Of a DNA stretch of 64,000 bases, positions 51,301 to 59,660 are shown piece after piece. The DNA is taken from the NCBI GenBank assembly GCA_964035545.1, contig OZ037767.1, positions 26,738,628 to 26,802,627 on the forward strand, in the 5' to 3' direction. Origin of the DNA: Bugula neritina (lineage: Eukaryota > Animalia > Bryozoa). The position numbers were made by a program, and so were the translations under genes. Positions within the stretch are counted from its first letter, which is position 1. The number at the start of each line of letters is the position of its first letter. The notes under the pieces were generated by a model. The model was not told where the DNA came from. It did not search any database and saw nothing but the letters and a program-made list of their open reading frames with translations.

Positions 51301-54300
51301 AGACATGCACTATAATATATGCAGACAAAGTAATAGAGACACGAGTGAAGTATCAACCCAACAGATGAACACAGTACGCAGTACGTGTAATATACAGAAA
51401 CTCACATTGTATATACATGACATGTGCAATGCGTATGTATATACAATGTAGAGGACACAAATATATAGCAGTGTAAATGTGCCAAACCTGTTTCTTAGAC
51501 CAGGGCTACAACGATATAAACATAACAGCAATTAATTTACACCAACATATTTCTATTTATTCTACCAGAAGTGAAAATATCATTCTAGCTTGCTAACTCC
51601 TGAGTAAGATAGACATTCTCATAATCTGTAACATAATGATGGTGGTTCAGCCATTTTGTATCGTATGTTTTTAAAAAATAAGAAACGAAAAAGCTTTGTA
51701 ATCTTTTCAGCAAAAACACTTCCGACAAGAGTCTAGTAGAAATAGAGAGTAAAACAGTCAACTGAGAAATGACCAGCGACTTGAGAGTGAGTAGTACTCA
51801 GAGTAGTACTAAGAGTGAGTAGTACTAAGAGTGAGTAGTACTGAGAGTAGTACTAAGAGTGAGTAGTACTAAGAGTGAGCAGTACTAAGAGGGAGCAGTA
51901 CTAGGAGTGAGTAGTACTCAGAGTGAGTAGTACTAAGAGTGAGTAGTACTAAGAGGGAGTAGTACTAAGAGTGAGTAGTACTCAGAGTAGTACTAAGAGT
52001 GAGTAGTACTAAGAGGGAGTAGTACTAAGAGTGAGTAGTACTAGGAGTGAGTAGTACTAGGAGTGAGTAGTACTAGGAGTGAGCAGTACTAGGAGTGAGC
52101 AGTACTAAGAGTGAGCAGTACTAAGAGTGAGTAGTACTAAGAGTGAGCAGTACTCAGAGTGAGCAGTACTAAGAGTGAGCAGTACTAAGAGGGAGCAGTA
52201 CTAGGAGTGAGTAGTACTCAGAGTGAGTAGTACTAAGAGTGAGCAGTACTAAGAGGGAGCAGTACTAGGAGTGAGCAGTACTAAGAGTTGAGTGAGTAGT
52301 ACTCAGAGTGAGCAGTACTAGAGGTATGAATAGTTCAGTGAGCGGTACTAGCACTGAGGCGAAAAACAAACCTCTGCTACTTTCAAGAACTCCGCAGTTA
52401 GATCCATTCTAACAAGAAACTTCTTATATATGTCAAGTGCTTCTTTACATTGCTTTCTGTTCATGTCAAAAAACTTTTCTACAATAAGTAGAAATTTAGT
52501 TGTAACCATAGCTGTCAATATTGCTGACTACAGAAAATTGTGCTCATAGTAACAATACTATGTAGCAACTGCTCTGTTTCCATCACCATCAGAAGATGAA
52601 CAATAATGGTAACTATTAGATATTTCAAGCAACATTATTAAATTACTGGAAAATGTTTCAACTCAAAATATCAACTGTGCTGAACTAACAAAACTTGACT
52701 TTGAGATGTTGTTTTGCTAGTGATTGTTGAGAGCATCACAACACCAAGTTTGTATCAGTCGACCAGATAGACTTATTGAACTCAATTTCTGGTTTAGTGA
52801 TTTTTGATCTTTACAAGTGAACTAGAAGACTGAACAAAAAATGAGCCTTACCTAATAGGTTTATAATTCCATCATTATAACAAGCAAACAATCTAATCAG
52901 GTCCTTGAATAGTAGAAGGAAAGCAGCATTGATAACTCCATTATTGAGTTCGTTGAGGGATGGCTAAAACACATAAGCATCGAATTACTATTTCGACATA
53001 CATATATACATAATAGAACTACATACATATATACATAACAGGACTACATACATGTATACATAATAGAACTACATACATATATACATAATAGAACTACATA
53101 CATATATACATAACATAATAAAACTAGAAGATTCCAACATTATGTTTGGTAAGTAAAACATTGAACATATTTCAAAAGTAAAATATTTATCTTTATTTAC
53201 CAAAGTTAAAAGTCAGTTTTACTCATTTGTTAGAATTTATCAGTCTAAATGTTAAACCAGCTTATAATTAATTTTGATATTAGAATGTATAAATAGTAGA
53301 ATAAAGGTTTACAAATAGTGATATGGGATATACTCACATCAAACTCCAATAGAGAGTCTATCTGTGCTTGTAAAACTGGCAAAGCCTTCAACAGCTGCAG
53401 GAAAAGAAAAAACATAAAATTATTACTGAGTACACTAGAATATTGCAGACACAACAACATTATTACAGTTTACTATATTGTATAGACAACTCCTATATGC
53501 AATAGATATAATTGTTATATGAACAATTGATGTTCCATTAGTAGTAAATACTTCATTCACATAAACAGCTACTGAATAAACATATCAATACATCACAATT
53601 ATAACAATATGATATAAACTGCTACCAGTATATCAATAATAGACTATGCAAACAAATTAGACACACAACTGACACAATTACATACCACTAAACAACCCTT
53701 ATCATTGGGTAGAAAGCACTCCAGTTATTAATAACATGCCTCGACAACTACAGTGCATTACATTTGTAGGAAACTTGTATACAGAACTGGCAGAAACCGC
53801 CACACAGAGACCACCACACAGAGACCGCCACACAGAGACCACCACACAGAGATCACCACACAGAGACCACCACACAGAGACCACCACACAGAGAAACACT
53901 ACGAGTAACCAACATTGTACAGAACTGATATTTTCCATACACATAACATGGTAACAAATGGACTACTTCGATCATCTACCTTTTCAGGAACCATTGTGCG
54001 GAGCAAACCATCGTCTTTGCCTCGTTTGACTTTGCAGAAATCAAAGGCCATAACTCGATATGCTACGGCCTTCTCATTGATGTACTTGGCATATTTTCTA
54101 ATGTATGTTGACATATCATACCCTAGAACAGTAGACATTCAAAAAGTAGTATATTCTCAACAGTTTGGCCTTACAAAACATATAGCAAATCAACTTCTAC
54201 ATGTGATATTAGAAAAACTCGCACCTTATATCATACTAATTCGAATAACCTAGTTAACTGTGTAGTTAGGAAAGTGACAAAGTCAATGCAGGCAATGAGA

Positions 54301-57300
54301 CAAATATATTGACTTTCCTTTATTAACTAAAGGCCAGAATTGGAAGAATAAAATCAATAAGTCATATACTAGATCAAGTATAGTAAGGACTAGCATTTGT
54401 ACTGGGACACTAACTACTATTGTAAATTAAACCCATCAGGTAATGTACCAGCACTGCAACATTTACCATATTTCTAGTAGTAGGTATAGTAGCAGAGGAA
54501 AGCTTAATAAACTTGTCATATAACATGAAAGGTCAAAACAGGTTAATAAATTTGGAAGATAAATGTTAAAATAATTTGGAAGTAAAAAAAAGGTTAAAGA
54601 AGAGCATAAATTATGGCAACTATTTGAGACAGGTGAAGGGAAGTTAAAGTTGAGGTTTTAGCTTCAATCAAAAATTTTAGGTAATATATTATATTATATT
54701 GACTATATTATCACTAAAAAGTTAGGCTTGTCTAAAAGGCAATTAAGAGCAGATGTTAGATAAGATATGTTCTCATAGGATATAAAATATATGATGCATG
54801 ACATCATATGTGAATGCCAGCTTTCACTTTCAACTTATAAGTCATTTGTTCAAATTAATTTCAGAGCAGTGAAATGATAGCCACAGTGGTTAGTATATAT
54901 GCAAGCTACATCAGAGTTTCGTGTGAATATCCTGCGGTTATACCAGTATCTGAAACCAAACTTTACACTTAAAGTTGTGGTAATATTACACACTGTACAT
55001 ACTCCAGTGTGGCTCAGGTCAAGCTGAGTTGATTGCATCTCATGCGTTGCCATGCATCATATAATATTATTATTAAAGCAAGTTTAAAGGCAGTTAATAA
55101 TATACTGAGTAGTGTTCGGAACATATAGCTGTTACAACAGAATAAACCATACCCTGTGGATGTGTCTTGTCAATAAAATTATCAAGATGGAAGGAGCAGT
55201 TATTTGAAGCGAGGTACTGGTAGAAACGCTATAGTAAAGAGACAGAAAGATAAGTTGTTAATTAATCTAATAATACGGCTAGTAACAACCACCACCCCAA
55301 TGTATTATTATATTTCACGTGTAACTACCAGGCTAGCCAGCCAGTGCACCCAGAGCTCACACACAGCCACATACTTCCGACAAGTCACCAGATAGAATCG
55401 GTTACTGAATGAAATTACTCACACAACCGTTATGCACGTGTGATAGTTCAAAGAATTTTGTATCAGCATTTACTAAACTAGAGCTCTGGATGACTTTGTC
55501 ACTAGTTTAGAGATGTGGATATGAGAGATCAGATAGGTTTGAGGGGGTTAAAAGAGAGGTAACTCTCATCACTGTTAAAACCGAGCAGCTTGAGCAATGA
55601 GCAGGTAGAATCGACAGACAGTCTTATCACACTGATAATAGTTACCCTGGGGACTGGATTTATCCACAAAGTTATCCAAATTGTAGCAAACAGTATTTGA
55701 AGCCATGTACTGTTGATATCTCTGAAATACCATATCTCATACAATATAACAATTACGGCACACAACATATCATATCTCAACTATTTCATCAATAAGATAA
55801 CAATTCAATTATATGATATATTAATATAATTTTTGTATAGGTCACAGCTACAGAGCAACTTTTAGACTTTGCAAATTGATAAATATACAAATGGTTGCCC
55901 AGAATTTAATTTTTGGAAAATGATCCTAAATCTCTCCCCAACACCAACACCTGTACAACAGATTTCCCTAATTAAATCCAACATTTACGCTATAAGATCA
56001 AGCAAGTTAATGAGAAAATTGGAATCTATACTAGAATTCTCTGAATGAATTACTAGGTTGAAAAAGATTCCCGAAATTTGCTTGCAGAACTATCAAGTTA
56101 AGCAAATTTAACACAGATAATAAATACAGGTAATAAACACAACGTCACCTCATTGCCATAGTTCATAATATTATGCACAGTTATAAGAGATTTGAATACG
56201 ACGACCCAGTTTGTACTTTGAGTTCTCTGTATAAGAAGGTCTGCTAGTTGGGGCACCGACACATTCGCCTCGTGTGTACATTGCAGCAGATCTAAAAGAA
56301 CATGGAAGATTCAAATAGACTCAACCTGCTAGAAGTTATTACTAGTAGCCTATAGAAATCATAGCTATGTATAAATACAGAGTATATCAACTCAAATGTT
56401 TTGAAGACTAAAATTTATTGCGGTATAAAATTATTTATACAATAAAAAGATTCTATTATGTTTTGAGCACCTTCAAATGCTGACAATATTATCCTAATAC
56501 AATATGCTATTAGATGCAATAAACATGTGTGTATATTACATATATTCCAAGCATTAATAAAAATAGCAAATAAATAATGGAGTAGATATAACATATCATT
56601 TAGCCAGAATAGTCAGCTATTTGTAGTCACAATTTATACCCATTTTTCTATGAAAAAATATAATAATATGAGGTGAAGCCAGCTACTTGAATAAGAAAAC
56701 AGTCATGTCTTGAATGCTGAATTTATATTGAATAAAAAAGTTTTACAAATATTGACCGATGCCAAAAATTTAGCTGTGTTTGAATATGAACTTTCTGTTG
56801 GAGAAAATGAGGTAAATATTCACAACTGAGTAGATGATTATGTATTAATAAAACTGTTTTACAGCAAGAAAAGAAAAGTTAAATGCAGTTTATAATCTAA
56901 TTTAGAGTTCGACACATGTATTTCATTTTGATGCATTGCTTTTTTTAAACCCAACACATTACTCGAAATCCCCTCAATTCAAAAACTGAAATTACACATT
57001 TTTAAAGTCTTACTTATTTATTATTTAAAAAAGTATCCACTCCAACATGAAAAATTATCTAGTCAGCCATTTGCATACTGTGGGAAATGCTTATAGGCTT
57101 ATAAAGGCAATAAAGTAAGATATTGACAAAGGGGGCCAATATAATGAAGAAATTATTGTTATTCTAAGGATTGTAGTTAAAAGTTTTTACTCAGTTCCCG
57201 GGACTGAAAGGCAGTGTAAGAGTGGAACGCAGCGTAACGCTAATCAATAAGCATTATAAATGGTAGATATTGATCATTTCAATAGCCGTGCAAGACGTGC

Positions 57301-59660
57301 ACATAATCATATAATGTTTTAAGCTTATACTTAGGATCAGAGAATATTGACTAACAATGTGTAGCAGATGATTAATTATACTACACGAAGAAAGCTATGT
57401 GTACTAGAGAATCACTATAATTAAGTTCATAGTAGGTTTACAGCAAGACAAAAGTTACTTTTAGTTGCAAATGGTAGTAAGCATTGTTTAATAAGATCTA
57501 TTGATACTTGATAACCTGTTAGAACAAATGCCATGGGCGATTTCATATTTTAAATCAGCCTATTAAATTTGGGTAAATCTTTAGCCTGAACTGCTAAGAG
57601 GCATTGCTGATTAACAGAAAATTGAACATTACTTAAAAACAAAGTATAACCAACAACAACTTCTTGACTTTAATTGCAGGTACAGCTGTGCCAGTAGAAC
57701 TACCTGTGACCAACACTGCTACAGAATGCAAGAATTTAAAACAAACTTGCAAAAAAATATTGCCAACTTGTATTGTCACAACTAGCTTTAAATAACATTT
57801 TGTTTTTGATGCAAACTACTTAAAGCGACCTGAATGAGTAACAGTCCAGCTTAAATCTTATAGCCATCTACCAGAGATGACTTGCTTTAAAAACCTTATG
57901 GCTTTCTTTGCACAATTGAATTGCAGCAAAGCATGTTGAAAAATTTTAAAACCTACAACCTACTAGGGGTTCACGTAGATATTTTACTTTAAAAAATAAG
58001 GTAGTACAAAAACCTTAAATTTGGGAGCAAAACACATTAAAATATAGTCAACAATATTAGTGTCAGAATGCTGTATTACTTGCTATGTTAGTATGATATT
58101 AGTACCATGGCTATTAGATAGATACTCTAAAAACACATCTTCTAACATTACTTAATGAGCTAAAATATCAACTTCAATGAATTTTTAGGTTAACCTTTAC
58201 ATTTAAAAGTGTTCCAAAAAGTAAATCAATTACAGTTAGCTGATTAAGTCATTTTATGCTTCTTATGAATGAAGTGAGTTTACTAAATATCTATAAACTC
58301 CAATAGCAACACAGAAGCTAGCAGTAAAAATATAATGTCATATTCTCTAAACTACAGAAAATGTTCATCTGTAACTAAGTCTGTTTAAAAGATCAACTGA
58401 AACATAAATGCTTGCATTTCGTGATAATATAAGCACATGATTAGTAGATGAGTCAAAACTAGAAACTTTAGTTGGCATACGAAAATAAAATAGCTGTTAA
58501 TTTAAGTTAAATAAAGACCAGTATGACTTTCATTATCACCCATTATTACAAGAGTTTAATAGTAAATACTAATTTAAACTGTACTATATATAAGTAATTT
58601 AATTTTGGAGCAGCTGTGGTCTAGGGGTTCGAGCCTGGACAAAGGCCATTGGTGATGTTAAGAAGAGCTCCTGTGCCTCATTTAAATAAGTCCTTAGCCT
58701 ACTTTAACAAAAACCCTTTCCACCAGGGGTTTCTCAAAGGGATAGCGACTATAAAGTTCCGTGAGTTTTTTTTATATATAAGTAATTTAATTGACTGAAA
58801 ACATTAATTAGCAACATTTTTTTATCTAAGTACTAAATTATTATGCTTGAATAGATCTATCTTCCTAATTTTATTTCTTTAGAACTATATATTACATTAA
58901 TATTAGGTAACATAATCAAGATATTCTGCAACATCAAAATAAATATTTATATTCATTTTGTTATATGTTAAACTTAATGTCATATTTAAGTGAGATTCGA
59001 CCTTGCAGTTGTAGTAGCAATTAGGAACAAGCTCATTTTTATTATGATTTTCTATTGATGAACATGACCACTAAAATATCACTATGACTAAGAAATTGAA
59101 CACCATCACTTATCACTATGAGTGATTCTGACTCACAATGACAATGCCACTCAATAACTTCAAGAGTGATACTTACACACAGACTAAAAGTATAACTGTA
59201 AGTGTAAGCATGACCCACACCAGTAATTACTTACTCTAACCCAAATTAGTACTACTAGTATTACTACTAGGGCTAGTAGTAGCACTACTAGTATTACTAT
59301 TGATATTAATATTAAAATTATTATAATTTTATTATATTTATAAATAATAATAATTAAAAATATTATAAATGACAGACACAGACAAAAAGATAGCTGATAC
59401 TAGAAGTATTACTATTAGTAAATAAGCATAGGCATAAATTTAACTTTCAGAATAAGTTTAACTAAGTCTAACTCTACCTCTAAGAGTAACAATAAGTTTT
59501 AGTTTAACTTCAAGTTTTAGTTTAACTCACAATCTAAATGCTTTCTTTTGGGTCCTGTTACTTCTTCAGTGGTTGCTTTGCAGACCGCTTTAGCCAGTCC
59601 CTGACCTGCTAAGCTGTGTTTGGCTGCATTTAATCTATCTACTACACTCTGTCCCGACAT
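42399..59660 (-). CDS. PICALM: Phosphatidylinositol-binding clathrin assembly protein (PICALM/AP180/LAP/UNC-11), up to ~1000 aa
   Basis: Exons 59660-59531, 56291-56149, [55721-55646 or 55228-55153], 54122-53980, 53394-53338, 52963-52852, 52478-52372, 51276-51235, 50018-49948, 49557-49458, 49260-49219, 49002-48744, 48425-48324, 47502-47380, 47275-46784, 46246-46187, 46096-46049, 45880-45512, 44116-43975, 43652-43538, 43161-43033, 42536-42399, total 3000 nt in frame. ANTH motifs: [49 protein letters not shown]. Also DLL, NPF and DPF motifs, DLDTSLASL and EKKLTGG. Central exons are probably alternative and less certain. Confidence 0.95.
44130..44490. repeat. ~35-40-bp minisatellite next to the PICALM acceptor at 44117
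   Basis: Core tttatatacacattacagctcatatata, ~10 copies. Confidence 0.9.
48025..48277. repeat. 19-21-bp minisatellite
   Basis: Unit actgcagatggtgtgacacat. Confidence 0.92.
48440..48645. repeat. ~15-bp degenerate tandem repeat
   Basis: tatatgtatgtctat units. Confidence 0.85.
49219..49260 (-). CDS. PICALM: PICALM 42-nt phase 0-0 exon encoding [14 protein letters not shown]
   Basis: tattag|agc...agg|gtaatg. The exon is symmetric and in frame. Confidence 0.7.
50505..50855. repeat. ~19-bp minisatellite
   Basis: Unit tagcagtgagagtactagg. Confidence 0.88.
51064..51087 (-). CDS. PICALM: Candidate 24-nt PICALM microexon (MIQVNSTG)
   Basis: ctttctcctttatctgctgtag|atgatacaagttaactccactggt|gtgagt, lying in a phase 0 intron. 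Confidence 0.55.
51781..52322. repeat. 16-bp minisatellite, >30 copies
   Basis: Unit aagagtgagtagtact. Confidence 0.95.
52996..53115. repeat. 25-bp tandem repeat, ~4.5 copies
   Basis: Unit acatacatatatacataatagaact. Confidence 0.88.
53793..53895. repeat. 14-bp tandem repeat, ~7 copies
   Basis: Unit gagaccaccacaca. Confidence 0.9.
55153..55228 (-). CDS. PICALM: PICALM exon 3b (mutually exclusive), [25 protein letters not shown](G)
   Basis: 76 nt, tatag|cgt...cagg|gtatgg, phase 0 to 1. Confidence 0.9.
55646..55721 (-). CDS. PICALM: PICALM exon 3a (mutually exclusive), [25 protein letters not shown](G)
   Basis: 76 nt, ttcag|aga...cagg|gtaact, phase 0 to 1. Confidence 0.9.
58585..58792 (+). 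mobile_element. Short tRNA-derived SINE (58605-58772) with 20-bp target-site duplication
   Basis: TSD tatatataagtaatttaatt at 58585-58604 and 58773-58792. A-box-like tggtctagggg runs straight into B-box ggttcgagcc. Oligo-T at the 3' end. Confidence 0.8.

What the first reader, a model, noticed from the sequence alone, without database searches (positions are those of the whole stretch)
54269..55721. Duplicated mutually exclusive exon 3 in the PICALM ANTH domain with a candidate docking/selector RNA switch
Seen: two paralogous 76-nt exons (55721-55646 and 55228-55153) with the same phases and intact splice sites. Including both or neither shifts the frame. The intron between them holds tgactttgtcact (55491-55503), the perfect 13-nt reverse complement of agtgacaaagtca (54273-54285) in the intron downstream of 3b. 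That pairing would loop out exon 3b. A second segment just downstream of 3b (55033-55057) can pair, with bulges, to the adjoining 54286-54303. Established: competing pairings to a downstream docking site control mutually exclusive exons in insect 14-3-3zeta and Mhc. Inference: an independently evolved switch giving two ANTH-domain variants. I know of no such arrangement reported for PICALM, but cannot search.
Basis: partly seen in the sequence, partly recalled or inferred. Interest (0 to 1): 0.85.

Follow-up and report, generated by a model that had tools for sequence, protein, structure and literature searches.

The report
Swappable ANTH exon in bryozoan PICALM
The clathrin-adaptor gene PICALM of this invertebrate (probably a bryozoan) carries two old, interchangeable copies of one ANTH-domain exon, both seen spliced in RNA and kept in three relatives, but the RNA-pairing switch proposed to choose between them is only weakly above chance and is not conserved.

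Summary
The exon pair is real. Exons 3a and 3b (76 nt each, 48/76 identical, GT-AG) lie in the single PICALM/LAP gene, minus strand. RNA contigs from four runs show exon2-3a and 3a-exon4 joints in every run, exon2-3b and 3b-exon4 joints at much lower depth (never both in one run), and no 3a-3b or skip-both joint. Three related species keep both copies in the same order under purifying selection; a fourth relative and all outgroups have one 3b-like exon. 3a is the derived copy: it changes near-invariant F93, L97, N101 and F104, yet seems to be the main form. The exon lies away from the known PIP2, VAMP and ubiquitin sites. The 13-nt complement exists, but chance gives it 1-9% of the time; it is absent from relatives, has 20% or less predicted occupancy, and the second 'selector' prefers a stronger local hairpin. 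Best reading: an ordinary tandem-duplicated mutually exclusive exon pair, backed by frameshift and nonsense-mediated decay; docking/selector switch about 20%. I found no paper on this in PICALM. The scan already noted many such exon pairs in other genes of this genome.

The parts
59531..59660 (-). PICALM/LAP coding exon 1 (130 nt from ATG)
   Evidence: RNA loose ends at exon 2 run into it
56149..56291 (-). constitutive exon 2 (143 nt, ends in phase 0)
55646..55721 (-). exon 3a, derived copy (CALM residues 92-117); joined to exons 2 and 4 in all four RNA runs
55584..55603 (-). cluster of three YGCY (Muscleblind-type) motifs just downstream of 3a; 3-4 such motifs in the first 90 nt in all four species (weak, combined P=0.02)
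55491..55503 (-). 13-mer 'selector a' in the 417-nt intron between 3a and 3b; not conserved in relatives
55153..55228 (-). exon 3b, ancestral-like copy; joints to exon 2 (two runs) and exon 4 (two other runs)
54788..54813 (-). partner arm of a 16-bp intra-intron helix with 55063-55048 (-31.3 kcal/mol, pairing probability about 0.87)
54273..54303 (-). candidate docking region: 13-mer 54285-54273 plus adjoining 54303-54286; also complementary to exon 4 (54035-54014)
53980..54122 (-). constitutive exon 4 (143 nt; starts in phase 1)

Best explanation
One tandem duplication of PICALM exon 3, before four sampled (probably bryozoan) lineages split, gave a mutually exclusive pair. 3b kept the ancestral sequence. 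3a diverged and appears to be the common form in whole-animal RNA; 3b is a minor, probably tissue- or stage-restricted form (inferred). The exon encodes the short helix 91-99 and the long loop 100-114 of the ANTH domain, so the isoforms differ in that loop's packing and surface, not in the known ligand sites. Exclusivity is enforced by splice-site competition steered by RNA-binding proteins (inferred; weak YGCY cluster after 3a), with frameshift and nonsense-mediated decay removing double inclusion and double skipping (frameshift shown, decay inferred). The 13-nt complement is chance or at most a minor, lineage-specific bias against 3b. Shown: exons, frames, joints, conservation, selection. 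Inferred: tissue specificity, regulators, decay, functional difference.
For: RNA joints 2-3a and 3a-4 in 4/4 runs (contig depth 283-495), 2-3b in X1 and X3 (59, 8), 3b-4 in X4 and X5 (16.5, 24.5), none for 3a-3b or 2-4. A spliced 2-3a-4 mRNA contig from a relative (L010). Both copies in L002/L004/L005, L006 and L003/L014/L078. pN 0.11-0.29 (3a) and 0.03-0.11 (3b) against pS 0.5-0.95. 3a copies form one clade, 100/99. Early stops on both/neither. 13-mers absent in relatives. Two-selector architecture at background, Fisher P=0.42. In C. elegans the fidelity of 14 of 29 such clusters relies at least partly on NMD, and several are steered by RBFOX/CELF-type proteins (PMC4165533).
Against: No single contig spans exon2-3b-exon4, and 3b contigs run on into flanking introns. 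Contigs drop rare variants, so missing 3a-3b joints are weak evidence, and contig depth is a poor measure of level. No regulator was tested, and the YGCY cluster is not significant in any one species by shuffling. Helices that would loop out 3b are slightly stronger than background in three of four species (Fisher P=0.045).
Confidence: 0.6

Rival explanations
1. Docking/selector switch: the downstream site 54303-54273 pairs either with the 13-mer upstream of 3b (looping 3b out, giving 3a) or with the segment just downstream of 3b (giving 3b), as in insect 14-3-3zeta and Mhc.
For: Perfect 13-bp helix, the best between these introns (-18.6 kcal/mol). The 13-mer is rare in the genome (15 copies) and not in a detected repeat. 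The second duplex next to it has P about 0.01-0.02; the combined, after-the-fact statistic gives P=0.027. The stronger helix would favour 3a, which looks like the main form.
Against: Neither arm is conserved in three relatives that keep the exon pair, whereas the described systems were found through conserved intronic elements (PMC4691838, PMC6071210). The selectors bind adjacent bases and share no sequence. Global fold: 13-bp helix probability 0.2 at 37 C and 0 at 20 C; the dock pairs with exon 4 (0.76-0.96) and selector b with 54788-54816 (0.6-0.9). Relatives alone: P=0.16, and shared-site test P=0.42.
Confidence: 0.2
2. Single loop-out helix with turnover: each lineage keeps some 13-14 bp helix between the middle of the 3a/3b intron and the intron after 3b, which represses 3b by default, with no competing selector and no conserved sequence.
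For: Best helices of -23.7, -24.7 and -25.2 kcal/mol (stacking only) in the window, L004 and L003, each from mid-intron; shuffle P 0.06, 0.09, 0.03; empirical Fisher P=0.045.
Against: L006 has no such helix (P 0.26-0.56). No species is significant against real sequence. Partner positions differ (868, 205, 285 nt after 3b) and sequences are unrelated. Several intron pairs were tested.
Confidence: 0.15
3. 3b is not used in full-length mRNA now; it appears only in splicing intermediates, retained-intron RNA or a short transcript ending in the intron after 3b.
For: No run shows both 3b joints. 3b contigs continue into the 3a/3b intron or about 450 nt into the next intron and end near 54700, while intron 2 has no coverage.
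Against: 3b is 88-96% identical in protein across species with saturated synonymous sites, keeps the near-invariant residues, and the in-frame 3b-exon4 joint exists in two runs of two studies.
Confidence: 0.05

Closest known systems
Tandem exon duplication-derived mutually exclusive exons (class catalogued in PMC8373072, PMC9741552; C. elegans set in PMC4165533)
   Same: Two homologous exons of equal length and phase, one used per mRNA, both under purifying selection, length 3n+1 so that errors shift the frame.
   Different: No such pair found reported for PICALM/SNAP91/lap/unc-11. Here the derived copy that lost near-invariant residues seems to be the main form.
Downstream docking-site systems: insect 14-3-3zeta, Mhc, MRP1, Dscam exons 4/9 (PMC6071210, PMC4691838)
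   Same: Layout: a complement between the inter-exon intron and the intron after the last variable exon, plus a second possible partner just after that exon.
   Different: No conservation or covariation; the two selectors do not share a site or a sequence; stronger competing helices are predicted; no experiment.
CALM/PICALM and Drosophila LAP ANTH domains (PDB 1hf8, 3zyk, 1hx8)
   Same: Same fold: a relative's 3a-containing ANTH model matches at TM 0.88 and 67% identity; exon 3 = CALM residues 92-117.
   Different: The solved proteins have one fixed version of this segment; 3a changes F93 to Y, L97 to M, N101 to T in all four species and F104 to Y/A/S/K.

Membership tests
PICALM/AP180 (ANTH) gene | ANTH domain with sequence and fold of CALM/LAP, KKKH-type PIP2 motif in exon 1 | tested here: met
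   E=1e-45 to CALM chains (relative's exons 2-4); Foldseek TM 0.88; KRKH in exon 1; nearest named proteins are LAP-like PICALM
Tandem-duplicated mutually exclusive exons | Adjacent homologous exons, same length and phase, intact splice sites | tested here: met
Tandem-duplicated mutually exclusive exons | Each exon spliced to both flanking constitutive exons | tested here: met
   all four joints seen; 3b's two joints are in different runs
Tandem-duplicated mutually exclusive exons | No stable mRNA with both or neither exon | tested here: inconclusive
   no such joint in four runs, but contigs cannot show absence; both forms carry early stops
Tandem-duplicated mutually exclusive exons | Both copies under purifying selection | tested here: met
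   pN far below pS for both copies in four species
Docking/selector RNA switch | Complementary element downstream able to pair with the intron before the last variable exon | tested here: met
   13-bp helix, borderline against chance
Docking/selector RNA switch | One selector per exon competing for the same docking bases | tested here: not met
   selectors bind adjacent stretches, overlapping by about 5 nt only in an extended duplex; shared-site test P=0.29 here, 0.42 over four species
Docking/selector RNA switch | Conservation or compensatory change of docking and selector sequences | tested here: not met
   best matches in relatives have 3-5 mismatches in 13, at chance level; caveat: relatives are distant and no close congener was reachable
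Docking/selector RNA switch | Disruptive and compensatory mutations change and restore exon choice | not testable with these tools
   needs a minigene
Steric-hindrance mutually exclusive exons | Intervening intron too short, or branch point close to the upstream donor with no AG before the acceptor | tested here: not met
   intron 207-417 nt with several internal AGs in all four species
U2/U12 incompatibility exons | Mixed major and minor spliceosome sites | tested here: not met
   all donors are ordinary GT sites, none GTATCC-type

The most novel reading that the evidence does not exclude
A lineage-specific competing-RNA-structure switch, arisen independently in a bryozoan, selects between an ancestral and a remodelled ANTH loop of PICALM. 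It would extend docking/selector control to a lophotrochozoan gene and show the pairing sequences turning over completely while the exon pair persists.
Probability: 0.2. Interest if true: 0.65.

Novelty: new member of a known kind. Interest (0 to 1): 0.4.

Why it matters
It gives a natural pair of ANTH domains that differ only in helix 91-99 and loop 100-114, a segment with near-invariant residues (F93, F104, L106, F109, D111) and, in the papers read here, no assigned ligand. Comparing the two isoforms could show what that segment does. It may also be how an animal with one PICALM gene (one exon-4 match in the genome) gets CALM-like and AP180-like specialisation (inference). The splicing arrangement itself is a well-known class, and this genome has many such pairs, so general surprise is modest unless the RNA switch proves real.

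Tried and rejected
Transposon origin of the 13-mers or hairpin arms: no second match in the genome for three intron stretches, 13-mer at background copy number; not supported, though the tool warns that no match is weak evidence. Gene duplicate or processed copy: exon 4 has one match. Steric hindrance and U12 incompatibility: rejected. Conserved intronic blocks between the window and relatives: none above shuffles; only a short GCTCTG/CTGCTG-rich block is shared among the three relatives (P about 0.02). RBFOX motifs just after 3b: present here, not at that place in relatives. Polymorphism in the 13-mers from RNA contigs: dock not covered, and the rows for the selector stretch were cut from the output. 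Closer relatives: protein searches with exon 2, exon 4 and a full-length relative, and one metagenome scan, found none close enough to align introns. Searches were slips (frame, query length, term format) that I corrected. Vertebrate-like loci returned by the metagenome scan (about L060, L065-L075) went through one bulk exon mapping; I did not establish their source, cannot exclude that some are human, and did not use, compare or search them further.
Full report
Gene and organism. The finding lies in a PICALM/LAP gene on the minus strand: exon 1 59660-59531, exon 2 56291-56149, exon 3a 55721-55646, exon 3b 55228-55153, exon 4 54122-53980. Exon 4 has one match in the 216-Mb genome. The nearest named proteins are LAP-like PICALM of a snail, a tubeworm and Lingula. 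Genome size, symbiont-metagenome RNA runs and earlier scan notes point to the bryozoan Bugula neritina; I did not verify this.

Observation. 3a and 3b are both 76 nt, 48/76 identical, bounded by AG and GT, and each gives an open 25-codon frame. With both exons a stop follows after 8 codons of 3b; with neither, after 19 codons of exon 4. The 13-mers are exact complements.

RNA evidence. Contigs of four runs from three studies were laid on 53925-56400. Exon2-3a and 3a-exon4 joints occur in all four (depth 283-495). Exon2-3b occurs in X1 (59) and X3 (8), and 3b-exon4 in X4 (16.5) and X5 (24.5). No 3a-3b or exon2-exon4 joint appears. Limits: the runs are RNA by the tool's guess (spliced joints make that likely), contigs show presence only, depth is a poor measure of level, and no contig spans 2-3b-4. 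3b contigs extend into the 3a/3b intron or the first 450 nt of the next intron, while intron 2 has no coverage; this suggests slow splicing around 3b (inference). A spliced mRNA contig of a relative, L010, also uses 3a.

Conservation. Genomic contigs of three other species (L002/L004/L005; L006; L003/L014/L078) carry both copies, 76 nt each, in the same order with intact sites. A fourth close relative (L007) has a single 3b-type exon, with an intron 2 too short to hide 3a, and the other animal loci that span exons 2-4 also have one copy. The four 3a copies form one clade (100/99) on a long branch; the 3b copies sit with the single-copy exons (25 columns only). Synonymous sites are saturated (pS 0.5-0.95) while pN is 0.11-0.29 for 3a and 0.03-0.11 for 3b. 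So this is one old duplication with both copies maintained. Whether L007 split before the duplication or lost 3a is not resolved.

Protein. Exon 3 encodes CALM residues 92-117. In an AlphaFold model of the relative's 3a-containing domain (mean pLDDT 87) this is helix 91-99 and loop 100-114, with the loop the least confident part of the core (80). The model matches CALM and Drosophila LAP at TM 0.85-0.88; the alignment used holds mostly 3b-like rows, so this shows compatibility, not proof. Against 39 other PICALM proteins, 3a changes F93 (37/39) to Y, L97 (35/39) to M and N101 (34/39) to T in all four species, and F104 (36/39) to Y, A, S or K, while keeping A98, L106, F109, D111 and K112. Known ligand sites lie elsewhere: PIP2 at helices 1-2 (PMC4194041), VAMP at L219, F240, M244, I247, L251 (PMC3267021), ubiquitin at F223, D224, L274, D276 (10.1101/2021.07.27.454047). 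The functional difference between the isoforms is therefore open; a change in loop packing or in an unassigned surface is the inference.

Is the pairing more than chance? A perfect helix of 13 bp or more arises in 0.9% of shuffles of this intron pair, 4% for any of the three intron pairs, and 3.8% of real window segments of the same sizes. By stacking energy with G-U allowed, P is 0.06-0.09. These are after-the-fact statistics in a scan of many windows, so they are a hint only.

Against a docking switch. Neither 13-mer is present in the relatives, and no intronic block is shared with the window above shuffles. The two proposed selectors share no sequence and bind adjacent stretches. A test for two partners at the same docking bases is at background in all four species (P 0.16-0.64, Fisher 0.42). 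Selector b has a much better local partner, a 16-bp helix with 54803-54788 (-31.3 against -20.5 kcal/mol), and the dock is also complementary to exon 4 (-27.3 against -24.9). In a partition-function fold of 1.8 kb the 13-bp helix has probability 0.2 at 37 C and 0 at 20 C; long-range predictions of this kind are unreliable, and co-transcriptional folding could favour the 13-bp helix before exon 4 is made. The described systems were recognised by conserved elements and compensatory changes (PMC6071210, PMC4691838).

What remains open. The relatives are too distant to test a young element. Three of four species have some 13-14 bp helix that would loop out 3b (empirical P 0.09-0.14 each, Fisher 0.045 with L006), which keeps a weak loop-out model alive.

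Mechanism. Steric hindrance is excluded by 207-417 nt introns with internal AGs, and U12 incompatibility by the donor sequences. The 3n+1 length makes nonsense-mediated decay a natural filter, as for 14 of 29 clusters in C. elegans (PMC4165533). The 3a acceptor is weaker than that of 3b here (10 against 16 pyrimidines in 20 nt), so something must favour 3a. Candidates are a protein activator (3-4 YGCY motifs in the first 90 nt after 3a in all four species, 13 against 7.4 expected, P=0.02) or the loop-out helix. I put regulated splice-site competition with NMD backup at 0.6, the docking/selector switch at 0.2, a lone loop-out helix at 0.15 and non-productive 3b at 0.05. That the exons are a genuine mutually exclusive pair I put at about 0.9.

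Comparison and novelty. It is a member of the tandem-duplicated mutually exclusive exon class. It looks like, but fails two tested membership features of, the downstream docking-site class. Searches of the held literature found no report of such a pair in PICALM, SNAP91, lap or unc-11, or of mutually exclusive exons in bryozoan genes; the library is incomplete. Verdict: new member of a known kind, interest 0.4.

Handling notes. The window's spliced model was searched exon by exon by reference; the joined step was left out. Vertebrate-like metagenome loci of unknown source were not used after the bulk mapping.

Noticed in passing
window 55063-55038 with 54813-54788: 16-bp intra-intron helix (one G-U), stronger than all 150 shuffles, covering a UGCAUG motif. 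In RNA run X1 two internal substitutions keep the pairing (G-U to G-C, C-G to U-G) and one breaks the terminal pair; too few to be significant.
   Followed up: partly
window 54298-54277 with 54035-54014: The proposed docking region is also complementary to exon 4 (17 of 21 nt) and this is the preferred pairing in the global fold; it would loop the exon 4 acceptor.
   Followed up: partly
window 55645-54700: RNA contigs cover the 3a/3b intron and the first 450 nt after 3b, but not intron 2 or the rest of the intron before exon 4: retained-intron intermediates or an intronic 3' end near 54700.
   Followed up: partly
window 47291-46728 and 46016-45441: Two long open frames (188 and 192 codons, acidic or proline-rich, two DLL motifs in the first) inside the gene's C-terminal region. 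They seem absent from the relative's mRNA L010, so they are probably long cassette exons that give an AP180-like long isoform.
   Followed up: no
window 54122-53980: Exon 4 is 143 nt because the intron found after the KRG codons in most other animal loci fetched is absent; shared with all close relatives (L002-L009, L077) and L017.
   Followed up: partly
L006 upstream of 3a (about -35 to -20) with 72-86 nt after 3b: 15-bp G-U-containing helix (-23.4 kcal/mol, shuffle P=0.013) that would cover the 3a branch-point region in that species; no counterpart in the others.
   Followed up: no
window 53980-55500: All four RNA runs differ from the assembly at shared exon 4 sites and by about 5% plus indels in introns: they come from a different population or cryptic species than the assembly.
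   Followed up: no
window 52000-52351, 52971-53120, 53777-53908, 61160-61000: Intronic minisatellites (16-, 25- and 14-nt units) and a long (TG)n upstream of the gene; ordinary.
   Followed up: no
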